Shown here: positions 50,929 to 64,000 of the stretch, one piece after another | How the letters are laid out: each line of letters opens with the position of its first letter | Position numbering within the stretch: position 1 is the stretch's first letter | DNA from: Lytechinus pictus | Taxonomy: Eukaryota | Length of the DNA stretch: 64,000 bases | Assembly: GCF_037042905.1 (NCBI RefSeq) | Contig: NC_087257.1 | Coordinates: forward strand, 9,920,001 to 9,984,000 | Reading direction: 5' to 3' | Made by a program: the position numbers and the translations under genes | Notes under the pieces: model-generated | Told to the model about the DNA's origin: nothing | Seen by the model: the letters and a program-made list of their open reading frames with translations, nothing else | Databases searched by the model: none

Positions 50929-51119
50929 TATTCTAAAAAAAGATTGATCAAAATGACCATTCTCTTGGCTAATATGGTCCAACTGATAAAACTGGCCAAA
51001 AGCAACCAAATTCCTGGTAGATTTTAACAAATAATTTGGTTGATTTTGACAATTTTTTCTCGGTCGGACACATATTGACCAAGAGAATGGTAATTTTGAC
51101 CCAATCCTTTTTTAGAGTG
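50929..51119. mobile_element. Short palindromic MITE about 60 bp upstream of a coding exon
   Basis: tctaaaaaaagattgatcaaaatgaccattctcttgg / ccaagagaatggtaattttgacccaatccttttttaga. Confidence 0.7.
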
Positions 51120-58038: not shown

Positions 58039-59548
58039 GTAGGACTCCCCTAAATCTTCTTTTCATATCAATTTCTGTGCTGAGTTTTGGGTTCTTATTT
58101 AATATACCGCTATCTATTGTTTTAAAAAAAGTTTACGCAACGCAACGCAGAACGGATTGAAGCACATAGAAAATGTATTGTCAAATGCCCTTCATGACAA
58201 CGAGCAAACAAGAAGTCTTGGTCAATAATCGGTGAATCAAAAGAGCAAACGACATAATTGCAATTCTTTGTCAGCTCCGAAATTGAGTACAATACTGCTG
58301 TTCCGGTTCACCAATTTTCGACAAAGACCTTCCACTCCACTTGACGTTTGCAGGATAGAAAAGTAGAAAATGACAATAGAGTTAGTGGTATGACATAATG
58401 CAGATGCTTTCAAACATGACGGTCCTGCAGCGTCTCATCATTTGGAAGAAAAAAAGAGAAATAATAAGAAGACGGAAAAGGACAAGAAAAAGAAAATTTC
58501 ATACGGAATTTATACTTTTTATTTACATCTAATCAAATTTCCAAAAGCTCCTCTTTATTTGGTCGTTTTGATTGGCAAACGTTGATGGTTGTGTGCCTAT
58601 TAATTCAATCGCTACAAGGAAATGACCTGCAGATTTGCTATTTTATGGTGAACAAACTCCCTCGCCGTCCCATTTTGGAATACTTACCAAGCCGTCCGAA
58701 TTTCCAATCGGTAACTAGATCAATTCGTCACGGGCCAGCGAGGGTGTTCCAAACTGGGTGGTGCCGGAAGGTCGACCCGCTCAATTTGTCCGTTTAATCG
58801 AATCTCTTGGAGGGTAATTGTTTTAATGAGTTTCAATGAATTGACGTTGGAACGTTTGGAGGGGGTTGAATACAAATGAATGGGATGAAATGACCAGAAA
58901 AAAAGAAAACTCCTTGATACACAATGCTTAAAATGGTTTCAGGAAAAAATTGAGGTCACTGGAGATAGGTGAAAGGATTCAATGCCCATCTTCCTAGTCG
59001 GTTTTTATTTGCCTATTGTTCCAATGAGCGTGAACCTTGAAATATCAGGATATAATTAAAAAGATAACATAAAATTGGGGAAAAATCAACATGCAACTTA
59101 TCCCACAATTTTCTTTCATTTTCTTCTATTTCATTATTTAGCTTTAATAGTCCGTATTCTAAAATCGGGTTTAATTTCAGCTGTAGTCTGAAGTTGTGGC
59201 TTTGCTATGGATAGCAAATAATCTTGTGAAATCAAATAGTATCAAACGATACATGCAGGTTCAATTTATCTGCTCATTTGATATTCAAATAATGAATTAC
59301 TCTGTTGATAGTATGGTTTTGTTCATCATTAAGGCATGATGAAAAACCACAGTATACCCTTTTTAACATTTAGGTTTCCCATAATTTTCACTCAGAGTTA
59401 GACCATGGCTTATTAAAAAGTTAAACCGGATTTCAGAATTCCGTCAAACTTCTTGCGGTATCATTAGGAATAAAACGATAAAAAGTATTCTGTTTGCATG
59501 GTTTGAGCAAACGCTTGGTTGATTTTTTTTTACAATCTTTACTTGCAG

Positions 59549-60193
59549 GGTTTTCTCCTAGCGATCCTTTACTGTTTCATGAATGGAGAAGTGAAAAATG
59601 AGATAAAGCGAAAATGGCGGCTGCACTTGTTGAACAGAACTCTGAGCACCCATAGAACATTACGCAGCTGTCAGTCACGGTCGTCGTGCTCGACACCGCC
59701 CAGGAAAGATTCGATGAAGAACCATTCCGTCTTCGAAACCAGCATCGGGCGCTCGACGTTCGGCGAACGATTCATCGCGTTGAAAAAACAATTCTCGCGG
59801 GGCGATTCGTCAAACGGTCACGTGGGCAACGGTTCCCTTGGCAACAGTATCGTGATACCGGATCCATCCGAACCGAGGCCAAACCCGGACGGTGCTGCGG
59901 ACCGGAGTAACCTTTACGACCACCATCCACCTGACTTCGATGAACACGAGAACGACGTCGAAGTGAATGAGAAAACCAAGATTGACATCAAAATCGAGGA
60001 AGCTTCGGATGACACACCGAACAGTGACCACGACGAGAGGGTCGATATGGAGAATGAAACGGAAGAAAAAAGTGATGTTTTTGAGGACGACGAGGAGGAG
60101 TGTGATATGACTTGTTCCGATGGACATACTAAACATGGCGTCAGTGATGGTGAATCAAGACAAACATTCAGTAACATTGAAACTGAAGTATGA
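59549..60193 (+). CDS. Class B1 GPCR terminal exon: GFLLAILYCFMNGEVKNEIKRKW..., long S/D/E-rich tail ending SNIETEV*
   Basis: ttgcag acceptor; QG...YCFxNGEVxxExxRxW signature; stop TGA 60191-60193; lies within ORF 59519..60193. Confidence 0.96.
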   Translation, partial: GFLLAILYCFMNGEVKNEIKRKWRLHLLNRTLSTHRTLRSCQSRSSCSTPPRKDSMKNHSVFETSIGRSTFGERFIALKKQFSRGDSSNGHVGNGSLGNSIVIPDPSEPRPNPDGAADRSNLYDHHPPDFDEHENDVEVNEKTKIDIKIEEASDDTPNSDHDERVDMENETEEKSDVFEDDEEECDMTCSDGHTKHGVSDGESRQTFSNIETEV

Positions 60194-60564
60194 AATCAAT
60201 GCCTGGAATCACCTTTGTACAAATATGATTGAACTTTCGTCATCGTTTCTCGTGATAACAAAAAAGATCTTTCATTACATTTTTCAAAATATTGATACAG
60301 TTAAACGTACTTGTTTTGTAGTCAACGCTTTTACATATTTATTTTTCTTAACTGTTCATAATCAAGCGTTGTTTATTGTTTTCAGGATTCGAACAAAATC
60401 TCTATTTTCACGACCAAACAGTGGCTAGAACAAAGTGATAGTAGAACAACTTGGTTCAACCATTTGGTTAGACGATCACTCTGTGGAAAAGGAGCTCGAG
60501 GTCACTGTGGCCTGAAAATAGTTAAGACGCCCTCTGTGGACTTAACTCCATGCTCGTCACACTA

Positions 60565-60739
60565 ACTGGGCGTTGTGGCGTGCGCCTGTAATCCAAGCTG
60601 TGGGGAAGTTACAAATTGATGCAGAGGTTCGAGCCCTGGTCACGTCTTTCGGATGGTGACGTTAAAGGTCGGTCCCAGACGTAAGTAATCATATCTGATT
60701 GATGCACGTCTGACAAAACTCAAATACACACACACACAC
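60565..60739 (+). mobile_element. Candidate 7SL-RNA-derived SINE (SRP Alu-domain head, B-box, Deu-like core, (CA)n tail)
   Basis: Head ACTGGGCGTTGTGGCGTGCGCCTGTAATCCAAGCT matches the recalled human 7SL 5' end at 27/35 positions; GGTTCGAGCCC at 60626-36; CGTCTTTCGGATGGTGACGTTAAA at 60643-66; CA repeat tail. Confidence 0.72.
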
Positions 60740-63361
60740 TGCATTGCCAGTGCAGTGAACCTTATATTCAAGTAGGCCTATAGAGTCGGGGTCGCGAAAC
60801 CGGGGAGGGAGGGGAGGGGTGGCTGAAGAGGCTTAAGCCCCTCCCTACTTTTTTAGTTAACGTTTACAAAAGCATCAAATTACCATGTTACTGTGATTTC
60901 TGTATGATCAACTCCGCCCCTTTCGTCCCAGCCACCCTCATATTCATGGGCCCGTATCAGAAAGGGTTCCGTTTGAACGCGAGTCAAACTATCGAGTGCA
61001 AATTCCAATGGGCACGGTTGATTCGCTGAAAAGTTGCGAATGATTTTTAGAGTTGCGTTTGATTTCAAATCTTTTTCAAACTACCATATTGCCATGACCC
61101 CCCTTTCTGGCTCACCCCCGCCACTATAAGAAACGTTCCACGGCTCCTGCGAGAGCCTCTTTTGTAGCCTCCATTATTATCAAGTATATTATACGTGTCA
61201 ACGTTTTAATGGAAATGTACACCATCAAAGTGTCTTGAGTTTTTTAATGTTGAGCGCAAAAACATTTAGAAAATATAAGATTTTTTTTAAATGGTAATGA
61301 GAGTGTTCATGTCCAGGGGCAGCGCCAAAATGGAAAGGGGCGACCGCCTTCTTGCATTTTTTTCCAAGGTGTAGTTGGGGAGACAGGAATGAGGGAAATG
61401 TGGTGGGGGGGGGGGGTCTTTTACTACAATATAATGAACAGTGTGTCCCGAATGAATGGAAGATTACTCTATTAAGAATATAGTGGTTGTAGGCACAAAG
61501 ATGTGGACAACTAATGATTTTTTTTCATGTAGACTTCTCGAAATATAAAAAAAAAAACATGGAAAAGAGCTACCAATGACAGGAGTGCTAAATATAAGTA
61601 CCTGGACAAATTCCTTATTTTTACTTTTGTTAGAATTATCGAACAAAATTATAATGACTCTCAAGGCATAAATAAAAAGTAATGAATAACAATAAAAAAA
61701 AATACTGTGAAAGTCTCGAACTGTTGTATAATTCTTTTTTTTTAATTCGCTAGGGAAATTCAGACGAGCCATGTTCATGCACTGGTGACTATGACAAAAA
61801 AAACACGCATAGAGGCTGATGGATTTAATATAAATTTTGAAATGCTTGTATATAGAAACTGAGTGCCAGTATTTGCCGCAGGTGTCATTGCATTTACGCG
61901 TTCACGTGTGCTCGTTGGTATAATGTGATTGTCTAACTTCTTTTGATATTGCATTGTTTTATTTATTTTTCAGGAATTTGAAAAATCGGGTATTATAATA
62001 ATTTTATTGAGAATTTTAAGCCGTTTCAGAAAAAGCTTGGACATATATATCACATATAAAGATTGCATAGTTCTATATATCTTGATTACTTTCATTTGAT
62101 TGACTCGAGTGCATATTTTTTTCTGAATTAATTCGTACGTCTATAAAAGATATAATGTCGCAAGAAAATTAATTGCGGTTCCTGAAAATGAAGAAGTACA
62201 TTTGGGAAGTGCCGATTACGACATAGTTTAATCTCTGATCTAACCCTCAATTATTGTTTATTATTTTGATAAGCCCATTTATGTAACATGCCTGGTATAC
62301 ATTATATGTAATAATGGTTTTATTCCAGATTCGATAAGCATGGAAACAATAAAGCCTGACTAAAGATAAAGATGCGATAGACACCATTTCCAATATGCTC
62401 AGGATACATTATTGTATTATAGATTTGTTGATAAAATTTACAAAAATAAGACTTTTCAAACTGCAACGTTCTCATGAATGTCTCAAAATATCATCACATA
62501 TTATGGAAACATGTGAAAATCGTTACATTACATTATAAATTTCTCGAATGTTGCCAAGTAATACATTTTCTAAAGTATCTATAAGCATTCTAATAAGATT
62601 GCTGCTTTACAATGTTCATTTTTGTGCAAAGTGGCAGTGCAATTCTACTAAAAGTGTATTGATGTGGTCAGGTGGTTAGGGCTAATTATCTTACCAAATA
62701 AGTCGATGGTATATCGACCGGGGAAACCCCGCTGCTGGGGGAGGGGAAATTATTCAAAAAAAGATATAAGGACCATTAGCATATATGATGTTCAATTAAT
62801 ATTTATGATGTAAGACATGAAGATGAAGTATACGCTATTCGAAATTTGCCATGATTGTCCACAAGCACCGCTATTCATAATCCGAAAACGGAATCAGTAT
62901 ACTTAACAAGGAAGAAGGTTCCCTATTCATTATATAGATTTAGGTTCTTAAATCATAAGGACCATTTTTCATAATGCAAGGGGGCTGTCAATCACGATGG
63001 AACAAAATGGTTTTGATGGTTGCTAGTCGTAATGTCTGTTGAGGATTTTATGAATAGTAACCCTTTAATCAGATTATGAATAGCGATCCCCATTGGATTA
63101 TGAATAGCGATTTCCTATGAAAATGTAACCTTATGACTCATCATTTTCCCATCTAATGAATAAAGGGCCTGACTTACGCGTTATGACTAGCGACCCTCTT
63201 CTGGTATTATGAATAGCGATCTTTATGAATAATGATCATTTTGAATAGTGATCACATTTCCTTATACGATTAGTGGTTCATATGACTGATGTGTGAACTC
63301 AATGAACACGCTTAGATGTGATTTGTATAAATAAAAATAATTATATGACCACCATGATTAA

Positions 63362-63739
63362 AGTGATTGGTTAACATTGGTTTGACTTTAAAAAAATCTG
63401 AGCTAGAAGGTCACACTTGTCACCTGTGTCTGTGATATGTTACAAAAATGAAGCCCAGAAAAAATTGCGTTCGAAAATAACTATTTAGTGCTTCAAAAAT
63501 TGAAATATAAAGTGACCGAAAACACCATCTTAATCTCATCCCATACACTTATGTGTACTATTTAGGCGTCTATAAGACACCTATTTACAAACTCGGGGTT
63601 TGCCTTGTAGTTTTAGCTTTTCATTCTCAATAATGGTTGTTTTCAGGGTTTATTAGTTCTAATACATGCACTTGTACACATGTTTCATCTTGGTTTGAGA
63701 ATTTTTTAAATCGGCTGCTCACAAAGTTAAACAATACCT
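63362..63739. mobile_element. TTAA-flanked element with imperfect TIRs (Kolobok-like)
   Basis: TTAA-agtgattggttaacatt ... aaagttaaacaatacct-TTAA. Confidence 0.55.
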
Positions 63740-64000
63740 TTAAGCAAAAACACACATGAGCCCACCTGACATAAACCAATAGACCCATTTTACAGATTGA
63801 TTAATGGATAACAGTAAACTTTGGTAGCTTCAAAGTTCGGTTTTAGATTATACCTAAAGTAAACGGAAAAGATTCAATATTATTATTTGACGCGAGATTA
63901 GACAATTTGACTTTCTTGATTAAATCGACCATAAAGGGGGTACCAAAAGTGACAGAACGAAGAAGTTTTCTTACTAGTTGTCAATGCGTCTGCTCTTTCG

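What the first reader, a model, noticed from the sequence alone, without database searches (positions are those of the whole stretch)
60565..60739. Candidate Alu-like, 7SL-derived SINE with a Deu-domain-like core in an invertebrate
Seen: the first ~45 nt match the SRP/7SL Alu domain (27/35 identical to recalled human GCCGGGCGCGGTGGCGCGTGCCTGTAGTCCCAGCT). They keep the UGUNR U-turn motif, helix 3 (GGGCGU/GCGCCU), helix 4 (UCC/GGA) and a possible loop-loop pairing (GUGGC/GCUGU). The sequence then leaves 7SL: a Pol III B-box (GGTTCGAGCCC), the segment CGTCTTTCGGATGGTGACGTTAAAGGTCGGTCCC, and a (CA)n tail. That segment resembles the DeuSINE/AmnSINE1 core as I recall it (CGTCTTTCGGATGAGACGTTAAACCGAGGTCC). 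Established: 7SL-headed SINEs are rare and known from Euarchontoglires (Alu/B1) and hagfish; known Deu-domain SINEs have tRNA or 5S heads. Inference: this may be an independently evolved 7SL/Deu chimeric SINE that recruits SRP9/14 as Alu does. It lies in sense orientation about 370 nt after the receptor stop codon, probably in the 3' UTR.
Basis: partly seen in the sequence, partly recalled or inferred. Interest (0 to 1): 0.85.

Follow-up and report, generated by a model that had tools for sequence, protein, structure and literature searches.

The report
Sea urchin SINE with 7SL-like head
A 175-base mobile element after a sea urchin receptor gene starts with a copy of the 5' end of signal-recognition-particle (7SL) RNA, the same trick used by human Alu, and such elements have not been reported outside vertebrates in the papers I could search.

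Summary

- **Source.** The window is from the sea urchin Lytechinus pictus: the receptor's last exon is 100% identical to XP_054767728.1.
- **Mobility.** Window 60564-60739 (+) is a short retroposon.
  - It is absent from the orthologous site in L. variegatus.
  - L. variegatus carries a second copy, 94.8% identical over 172 nt, in an intron of the same gene. That site is empty in L. pictus.
- **Head.** The first 47 nt match the Rfam Metazoa_SRP model from model position 1.
  - Scores: 32.3 bits, E 1.3e-4 for the whole window; 27.3 bits for the second copy.
  - Helices 2, 3 and 4 and the UGUAAU turn are kept. No tRNA model hits the element.
- **Middle.** A tRNA-type B box follows, then 34 nt that match the first quarter of the Deu domain printed for hagfish SINEs (0 of 2000 shuffles reach the score). 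The rest of Deu is missing.
- **Tail.** A conserved stem-loop and an (AC)n tail close the element.
- **Not settled.** The following remain untested or unknown:
  - copy number;
  - the host 7SL gene;
  - the partner LINE;
  - Pol III transcription;
  - SRP9/14 binding.

The searchable literature lists 7SL-headed SINEs only from Euarchontoglires and hagfish.

The parts
60564..60739 (+). Whole retroposon copy (SINE) in L. pictus
   Evidence: Absent at the orthologous L. variegatus site: homology stops at 60563 and resumes about 50 nt after the tail. A second copy lies at L021 37078-36909 (-), 94.8% identical over 172 nt. There is no long ORF in any frame.
60565..60611 (+). Head resembling the 5' Alu domain of 7SL RNA (model positions 1-47)
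   Evidence: Metazoa_SRP scores 32.3 bits, with high posterior probability over positions 1-47. The window-wide E-value is 1.3e-4. The head aligns from nt 1 with nt 1 of the hagfish SINE1-1_EBu head; 0 of 2000 shuffles reach the score.
60570..60579 (+). Stretch equivalent to the 7SL A box (7SL positions 6-15)
   Evidence: Positions taken from PMC7245038 (A box at 6-15 of human 7SL) and mapped through the alignment. Promoter activity is inferred, not tested.
60587..60592 (+). UGUAAU motif between helices 3 and 4
   Evidence: Identical to the Rfam consensus at model positions 23-28. That this is the SRP9/14 contact is my own knowledge of Alu-domain structures.
60626..60636 (+). tRNA-type Pol III B box, GGTTCGAGCCC
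   Evidence: Read from the sequence. It is identical in both copies. It resembles the B boxes of tRNA-derived hagfish SINE heads printed in the PMC7245038 supplement.
60643..60676 (+). Segment homologous to the 5' end of the Deu domain
   Evidence: Local alignment to hagfish SINE2-7_EBu, EbuSINE1 and SINE2-7B_EBu Deu domains. Scores are 28-36 against shuffles of 14.6 +/- 2.2; 0 of 2000 shuffles reach them.
60676..60712 (+). 3' stem-loop: CAGACGT/ACGTCTG with an inner AATCA/TGATT stem
   Evidence: Predicted in the consensus fold of the two copies. The five differences inside it fall in unpaired positions or give U-A to U-G.
60726..60739 (+). (AC)7 microsatellite tail
   Evidence: The L. variegatus copy ends in (AC)5.
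60558..60563 (.). Candidate target-site duplication CACACT, 5' copy (3' copy at 60735-60740)
   Evidence: It is the only direct repeat of 6 nt or more flanking the element. The L. variegatus empty site reads CACGCT once. It overlaps the AC tail, so it is ambiguous.
59549..60193 (+). Last coding exon of the host class-B GPCR gene (stop codon ends at 60193)
   Evidence: 100% identical to residues 333-546 of XP_054767728.1, VIP receptor 1-like, L. pictus.

Best explanation
This is a copy of a young SINE family of Lytechinus sea urchins, built from four modules.

1. The first ~47 nt come from the 5' end of 7SL (SRP) RNA, that is helices 2-4 of the Alu domain.
2. A tRNA-type B box follows.
3. Then comes the first ~34 nt of the Deu conserved domain.
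4. A stem-loop and an (AC)n tail close the element.

**Likely origin (inferred).** A reverse transcriptase copying a tRNA-headed Deu SINE switched template to 7SL RNA. The 5' half of the tRNA head was thereby replaced by the 7SL 5' domain. The hagfish 7SL SINE and the 5S-headed Deu SINEs are thought to have arisen in a similar way.

**Likely working (inferred).**
- RNA polymerase III starts at or next to the first base, using the 7SL-derived A-box region and the tRNA-type B box.
- It reads through the element, which has no TTTT run, into the flank.
- The 3' stem-loop and AC repeats are recognised by a still unidentified LINE reverse transcriptase.
- The folded 5' domain may bind SRP9/14 and bring the RNA to ribosomes, as in Alu.

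**Shown:** the module structure, the mobility and the two independent insertions.
**Inferred:** transcription, the partner LINE and SRP9/14 binding.
For: **Mobility**
- Window 59400-60563 and 60790-61431 align to L021 70834-71993 and 72007-72693. The element itself aligns elsewhere, to L021 37078-36909 on the minus strand.
- Both empty sites were aligned. The L. variegatus copy's site maps to window ~23902 with no element there.

**Head**
- The SRP model hits both copies, starting at model position 1 and one base inside the insertion edge.
- Helix 2 is kept as A-U, C-G, U-A where the consensus has g-c, C-G, c-g. Two pairs are therefore changed on both sides.
- All 12 pairs are standard. The SRP-like fold is -8.3 kcal/mol against an MFE of -11.1.
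- There is no tRNA hit at E up to 10 and no ARAGORN hit.
- The head matches the hagfish SINE1 head from nt 1.

**Deu segment**
- It matches published Deu domains.

**Constraint**
- The copies differ at 2 of 111 positions in head, B box and Deu segment, but at 7 of 52 in the tail (Fisher p = 0.005).
- The tail hairpin is kept.

**Literature**
- 7SL-headed SINEs are listed only from Euarchontoglires and hagfish (PMC7245038; PMC10886601).
- Chimera formation is the origin proposed for the hagfish family (PMC7245038).
- A 5S sequence fused onto a tRNA head in some Deu SINEs (PMC4758252).
Against: - Only two copies could be reached, so copy number, consensus and subfamilies are unknown.
- Target-site duplications are not clear: 6 nt overlapping the tail in one copy, none obvious in the other.
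- The SRP scores are far below Rfam's gathering score, and only the 5' domain is present. The 3' part of the Alu domain, which Alu, B1 and the hagfish SINE keep, is not.
- Thermodynamic folding does not single out the head (z = +0.84) or the whole element (z = +0.43).
- The host 7SL gene was not available for comparison.
- No LINE with a matching 3' end was found. The young LINE in the window (13009-15981) ends in GAATT-type repeats, not AC.
- No copy was found in 127.6 kb of S. purpuratus or 57.8 kb of Diadema. The family may therefore be narrow, or these samples may simply be too small.
Confidence: 0.8

Rival explanations
1. The element is an ordinary tRNA-derived SINE (SINE2). The likeness of its 5' part to 7SL RNA would then be convergence on Pol III A-box-like sequence, or chance.
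For: The B box and the bases after it look like the T-arm and 3' end of tRNA-derived SINE heads. Known Deu SINEs have tRNA or 5S heads (PMC4758252, PMC5499810). The SRP scores are below the gathering cut-off.
Against: No tRNA model or ARAGORN hit covers the head, even at E up to 10. The two tRNA-derived SINE heads elsewhere in the window gave no SRP hit, and one of them hits the tRNA model. The SRP match covers three helices and the UGUAAU motif, in register from RNA position 1. The head matches an accepted 7SL-derived SINE head from nt 1.
Confidence: 0.1
2. The 7SL-like head was not recruited anew in sea urchins. It would be inherited from an old deuterostome 7SL-headed SINE lineage, or have arrived by horizontal transfer.
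For: The head is very like the hagfish SINE1 head over its first 30 nt. Horizontal transfer has been proposed for the Nin/Deu domain between lancelet and sea urchin SINEs (PMC5804259).
Against: 7SL RNA itself is highly conserved, so likeness of the heads is expected either way. Downstream of nt ~47 the two SINEs share nothing: the hagfish element keeps 7SL 3' sequence and RTE parts (PMC7245038). No copy was seen in the S. purpuratus, Diadema, elephant shark or amphioxus loci sampled.
Confidence: 0.07
3. It is a one-off chimeric retrocopy (7SL RNA joined to a SINE RNA by template switching) and not a propagating family.
For: Such chimeras are a known by-product of LINE reverse transcription (discussed in PMC7245038).
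Against: Two copies with the same junctions lie at different sites in two species. Each is absent from the other species' orthologous site. The chimera itself has therefore been copied at least twice since the species split.
Confidence: 0.02

Closest known systems
Alu and B1 (SINE1 of Euarchontoglires)
   Same: The head starts at 7SL nucleotide 1. It keeps the 5' Alu-domain fold (helices 2-4 and UGUAAU) and an A-box region in the same place.
   Different: Alu and B1 consist of 7SL sequence only. They keep 7SL 1-63, 76-83 and 267-299 and end in poly(A), which L1 uses (PMC7245038). This element keeps only about 1-47, has a tRNA-type B box, a Deu fragment, a stem-loop and an (AC)n tail, and lives in an echinoderm.
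SINE1-1_EBu of hagfish (PMC7245038)
   Same: Both have a 7SL-derived head joined to the body of an older tRNA-derived SINE, and a non-poly(A) microsatellite tail, which implies a non-L1 partner. The heads align from nt 1.
   Different: The hagfish element keeps both the 5' and 3' parts of the Alu domain and carries RTE-derived body and tail with (AAC)n. It has no Deu domain. It is 282 bp long with about 17-bp target-site duplications.
Deu SINEs with replaced heads (SINE3, AmnSINE1: 5S head fused onto a tRNA head)
   Same: Both have a Deu-type body segment right after the remains of a tRNA-like head, with a different Pol III RNA fused to the 5' end and taking over the promoter (PMC4758252).
   Different: Here the donor is 7SL rather than 5S rRNA. 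Only the first ~34 nt of the ~140-nt Deu domain are present.
SINE2-3_SP, the Nin/Deu SINE of Strongylocentrotus purpuratus (named in PMC5804259)
   Same: It is a sea urchin SINE carrying a Nin/Deu domain, and so a possible relative of the tRNA-headed parent.
   Different: It is filed as tRNA-headed.

Membership tests
SINE (short interspersed element) | Short, non-coding, non-autonomous | tested here: met
   171-176 nt, with stops in all six frames.
SINE (short interspersed element) | Several dispersed copies with the same ends | tested here: met
   Two copies at non-orthologous sites with the same 5' start and the same AC tail.
SINE (short interspersed element) | Insertion shown by empty orthologous sites | tested here: met
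   Each copy's site is empty in the other Lytechinus species.
SINE (short interspersed element) | Target-site duplications | tested here: inconclusive
   A 6-nt CACACT repeat overlaps the tail in the L. pictus copy. No clear repeat flanks the L. variegatus copy, which has 3-5 extra bases at its 5' junction.
SINE (short interspersed element) | Internal Pol III promoter that is actually used | not testable with these tools
   The B-box motif and the region equivalent to the 7SL A box are present, and there is no internal TTTT. Transcription needs experiments.
SINE (short interspersed element) | 3' end shared with a partner LINE | tested here: inconclusive
   No LINE 3' end in 410 kb of fetched loci and window matches the tail. 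The young LINE at 13009-15981 ends in different repeats.
SINE1 (7SL-derived head) | 5' part homologous to the 5' end of 7SL RNA, starting at RNA position 1 | tested here: met
   Metazoa_SRP hits on both copies from model position 1. The head also aligns with the SINE1-1_EBu head.
SINE1 (7SL-derived head) | Keeps the 3' part of the Alu domain (7SL ~267-299) that pairs with the 5' part | tested here: not met
   Beyond position 47 the model alignment is filled with non-standard pairs and a large deletion.
SINE1 (7SL-derived head) | Head derived from the host's own 7SL gene | not testable with these tools
   No 7SL gene lies in the window or in the fetched Lytechinus and Diadema loci. No sea urchin genome could be searched by DNA.
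SINE1 (7SL-derived head) | Binds SRP9/14 | not testable with these tools
   Only the sequence determinants are seen: UGUAAU, the GGC loop, and helices 3 and 4.
Deu-SINE superfamily | Central Deu domain of about 130-140 nt | tested here: not met
   Only 60643-60676 aligns, to the first ~37 nt of the domain. The conserved second block (GATCCCACGG...AAGAGTAGG) is absent.
Deu-SINE superfamily | Homology to the 5' end of the Deu domain (the part also called Nin/Inv) | tested here: met
   29 of 34 positions identical to SINE2-7_EBu; 0 of 2000 shuffles reach the score. The Nin/Inv naming is from PMC5804259 and was not tested against Nin or Inv sequences.
SINE2 (tRNA-derived head) | Head recognisable as tRNA-derived | tested here: not met
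   No tRNA model hit at E up to 10 and no ARAGORN hit in 60450-60850. Only the B-box stretch looks tRNA-like.

The most novel reading that the evidence does not exclude
This would be the first 7SL-headed SINE in an invertebrate and a third independent recruitment of the SRP Alu domain by a SINE. It would show that the 47-nt 5' domain alone, joined to a tRNA B box and a non-L1 LINE tail, is enough. Docking on SRP9/14 and the ribosome would then be a general route by which SINE RNAs reach LINE proteins, not a peculiarity of L1 and Alu.
Probability: 0.5. Interest if true: 0.8.

Novelty: new variant of a known kind. Interest (0 to 1): 0.68.

Why it matters
SINEs with 7SL-derived heads are reported only from one mammalian clade and from hagfish (PMC7245038, PMC10886601). 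Their rarity, next to the ubiquity of tRNA heads, is unexplained. A young and apparently still active family in a laboratory sea urchin offers an independent natural experiment.

- It keeps only the 5' Alu domain, which narrows down which part of 7SL RNA helps a SINE spread.
- It pairs that domain with a non-poly(A) tail, so the benefit cannot depend on L1.
- Embryos of L. pictus and L. variegatus can be injected and have genome assemblies. Pol III transcription, SRP9/14 binding and new insertions could therefore be tested directly.

It also adds 7SL to tRNA and 5S as a head type found next to a Deu-type segment. This supports module swapping as the way conserved SINE domains persist.

Tried and rejected
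**Searches for more copies, all without a real hit**
- blastn and nhmmer inside the window: only the AC tail repeats.
- One metagenome scan with a head + B-box + Deu pattern: a single hit, which is a bacterial ORF matching by chance.
- One scan of bacterial and archaeal genomes with a B-box + Deu pattern: 18 hits, none similar to the element.
- Four viral-collection scans: nothing relevant.
- nhmmer on loci from Diadema, S. purpuratus, elephant shark and amphioxus: nothing, or weak hits without SINE context.

**Ideas dropped**
- Translating the element to look for spurious ORFs in protein databases: the open stretches are 34 aa or shorter.
- Comparison with a SINE family I assembled from three elephant-shark copies: no similarity. 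I could not tell whether that family carries Deu, so this result says nothing.
- Full-text search for the Deu motif: no useful hit. Supplements of three SINE papers are not held.
- The LINE at 13258-15640 as partner: rejected as an obvious candidate. Its insertion ends at 15981 in GAATT-type repeats, and the CA microsatellite next to it is older flank shared with L. variegatus.
- The mir-133 hit at 50983-51061: no match within 3 mismatches to the mature sequence as I recall it, so probably spurious.

**Steps deliberately not taken**
- I did not fetch the L. pictus locus of the host protein, so as not to read the masked stretch 22056-22219 from another copy of the genome.
- I used no human sequence in any tool.

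Full report
**What is there**

Window 60564-60739 (+ strand) reads, in order:
- a 47-nt stretch beginning ACTGGGCGTTGTGGCGTGCGCC TGTAAT CC...;
- a 14-nt linker;
- GGTTCGAGCCC at 60626-60636;
- CGTCTTTCGGATGGTGACGTTAAAGGTCGGTCCC at 60643-60676;
- a hairpin with stem CAGACGT/ACGTCTG at 60676-60712;
- an A-rich linker and (AC)7 at 60726-60739.

**Source and setting**

- The ORF ending at 60193 encodes TM7 and the tail of a class-B GPCR.
- A search of 1.84 billion representative proteins gave a 546-aa protein that is 100% identical over all 214 residues.
- That protein is named XP_054767728.1, vasoactive intestinal polypeptide receptor 1-like, Lytechinus pictus. An L. variegatus orthologue sits in the same 90% cluster. 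The window is therefore sea urchin DNA.
- Further exons of the gene lie at about 34348, 46849 and 57901.
- No + strand AATAAA lies between the stop codon and the element; the first is at 61671. A 3' UTR location is thus plausible but not shown.

**It is a mobile, multi-copy element**

I fetched the L. variegatus orthologous locus (L021, 81.6 kb).
- Window 59400-60563 aligns to L021 70834-71993 at 90.5% identity.
- Window 60790-61431 aligns to L021 72007-72693.
- Window 60564-60735 does not align there. It aligns to L021 37078-36909 on the minus strand, 94.8% identical over 172 nt, inside an intron of the same gene.

At the orthologous site, homology stops exactly at ...GTCACACT in L. pictus, where L. 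variegatus reads ...GTCACGCT.

The flanks of the L. variegatus copy map to window ~23581-23971, meeting at ~23902 with no element between them. Each species thus has one insertion that the other lacks, and both carry the same head, B box, core and tail. This rules out a single-copy oddity or a one-off chimeric retrocopy. The family has been active since the two species split.

Two lineage-specific insertions in roughly 60 kb of shared sequence hint at a high copy number. That is an extrapolation from two events.

Target-site duplications are unclear.
- In L. pictus, CACACT occurs at 60558-60563 and 60735-40, overlapping the AC tail.
- Around the L. variegatus copy there is nothing obvious.
- About 50 nt after the L. 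pictus tail (60741-60793) have no counterpart in L. variegatus. I treat this as an unrelated indel in a fast-evolving stretch (72% identity).

**The head is 7SL-like, not tRNA-like**

- With Rfam's gathering cut-offs, the window gives only a tRNA at 21847.
- With E-value reporting, Metazoa_SRP matches 60565-60727 at 32.3 bits. E is 7.9e-7 for the 401 nt searched and 1.3e-4 for the whole window, where it is the only SRP hit.
- The L. variegatus copy gives 27.3 bits, E 2.2e-5.
- The score comes from model positions 1-47, which align with high posterior probability. The rest of the alignment is a large deletion and mostly non-standard pairs.
- Model position 1 falls on 60565, one base inside the insertion edge defined independently by the empty site.
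- Three helices are present:
  - helix 3, six pairs, with a GGC-containing loop;
  - helix 4, UCC/GGA;
  - helix 2, A-U, C-G, U-A where the consensus has g-c, C-G, c-g, so two pairs are changed on both sides yet still pair.
- The UGUAAU between helices 3 and 4 is identical to the consensus.
- All 12 pairs are standard. This fold costs -8.3 kcal/mol against an MFE of -11.1.
- Folding energy alone is unremarkable: z = +0.84 for the head and +0.43 for the whole element.
- No tRNA model hit appears at E up to 10, and ARAGORN finds nothing there.
- The supplement of Kojima 2020 (PMC7245038) prints the hagfish SINE1-1_EBu head. The Lytechinus head aligns with it from first base to first base over 30 nt. 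The score is 38 against shuffles of 13.1 +/- 2.1, and 0 of 2000 shuffles reach it. That text is machine-read from a PDF, so the counts are approximate.

**The B box is of tRNA type**

GGTTCGAGCCC followed by TGG resembles the B-box stretch of tRNA-derived hagfish SINE heads in the same supplement. It also resembles the tRNA-headed SINE at window 21847. The head therefore looks composite: a 7SL 5' domain followed by the 3' remnant of a tRNA-like head. Whether the host 7SL has a similar B box cannot be decided without its sequence.

**The Deu-like core**

The same supplement prints Deu domains of EbuSINE1, EbuSINE2, SINE2-6_EBu, SINE2-7_EBu and AmnSINE1.
- Window 60643-60676 aligns to the first ~37 nt of the hagfish domains.
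- Against SINE2-7_EBu, 29 of 34 positions are identical, with one 2-nt gap. The score is 36 against shuffles of 14.6 +/- 2.2, and 0 of 2000 shuffles reach it.
- EbuSINE1 scores 28 and SINE2-7B_EBu scores 33.
- By eye, the AmnSINE1 row shares CGTCTTTCGGAT with the element. I entered no human sequence into any tool.
- The remaining ~100 nt of the domain, including the conserved GATCCCACGG...AAGAGTAGG block, are absent.

The element therefore carries a Deu 5' fragment. This is the part the literature says is shared with the Nin and Inv domains (PMC5804259, PMC4758252). It does not carry a full Deu domain.

**Signs of constraint**

The two copies differ at 2 of 111 positions from 60565 to 60675, but at 7 of 52 from 60676 to 60727 (Fisher p = 0.005). 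Inside the 3' hairpin, the differences fall in unpaired positions or change U-A to U-G. With two sequences this is only a hint. It suggests that source copies are held constant in head, B box and Deu fragment, and that the tail evolves while keeping its stem-loop.

**Distribution**

A profile of the two copies finds nothing in any other fetched locus:

| Locus | Species | Size |
|---|---|---|
| L022 | Diadema antillarum | 57.8 kb |
| L023 + L024 | S. purpuratus | 127.6 kb |
| L025 | elephant shark | 27.6 kb |
| L026 | amphioxus | 49.5 kb |

Scans of metagenomes, prokaryote genomes and viral contigs gave only chance hits. The family may be confined to Lytechinus or its relatives, but the samples are small.

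**Partner LINE**

None was identified. The LINE ORFs at 13258-15640 belong to an L. pictus-specific insertion (13009-15981) that ends in GAATT-type repeats. The CA-rich microsatellite after it is older flank shared with L. variegatus.

**How it probably works**

Shown:
- the module structure;
- two independent insertions;
- the absence of an internal terminator.

Inferred from established SINE biology:
- Pol III initiates from the A-box region (7SL positions 6-15 according to PMC7245038) and the B box.
- The transcript runs into the flank.
- A LINE reverse transcriptase recognises the 3' stem-loop and AC repeats.
- The 5' domain may bind SRP9/14 and bring the RNA to translating ribosomes, as argued for Alu and for the hagfish family (PMC7245038).

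Its origin by template switching, from a tRNA-headed Deu SINE RNA to 7SL RNA, is inferred by analogy. The models are the hagfish case and the 5S-onto-tRNA fusion in some Deu SINEs (PMC4758252).

**Comparison and novelty**

- It works like a SINE1, but it fails one feature shared by all described SINE1 families, namely retention of the 3' half of the Alu domain.
- It is not a full Deu SINE.
- Kojima wrote in 2020, and again in 2024, that SINE1 is known only from primates, rodents and their relatives, and from hagfish (PMC7245038, PMC10886601).
- I found no paper describing a 7SL-headed SINE in an echinoderm.
- Repbase and Dfam could not be consulted, so an existing entry filed under SINE2 cannot be excluded.

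I rate it a new variant of a known kind.

Noticed in passing
window 13009-15981 (+): A LINE fragment with endonuclease and reverse-transcriptase ORFs (13258-15640). It is an L. pictus-specific insertion, absent at L021 ~28905, and ends in GAATT/TGAAT-type repeats. Its closest protein in the database is only 74% identical over part of its length (P0004).
   Followed up: partly
window 21845-22055 (+), running into the N stretch 22056-22219: A tRNA-Met-like head (Rfam tRNA 47.1 bits) followed by AAGACTTTTAAAAAATGGGA... This resembles the Meta domain printed in the PMC7245038 supplement, so it is probably a Meta-type SINE. The masked stretch was left alone.
   Followed up: partly
window 31970-31880 (-): Another tRNA-headed SINE-like sequence, with B box GGTTCGATCCC followed by TGTCCTTGAGCAAGGC. 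A weak orthologous match exists in L021 near 46600.
   Followed up: no
window 63357-63745 vs L021 40289-40677: A 389-nt stretch that is 96.7% identical between L. pictus and a non-orthologous place in L. variegatus. This is another young repeat family shared by the two species.
   Followed up: no
window 24296-24433: A long near-perfect hairpin that hits plant microRNA models on both strands (MIR7504, 61.8 bits). It is probably a MITE-like inverted repeat.
   Followed up: no
window 50983-51061 (-): A weak mir-133 model hit (30.8 bits, E 0.006, below the cut-off). No match within 3 mismatches to the mature miR-133 sequence as I recall it, so it is probably spurious.
   Followed up: yes
window 60741-60793: About 50 nt directly after the SINE tail have no counterpart in L. 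variegatus, which has 16 other bases there. This may be an indel, or sequence brought in with the insertion.
   Followed up: partly
window 21516-21846: A long CAT/CAC (His-codon-like) microsatellite just upstream of the tRNA-headed SINE.
   Followed up: no
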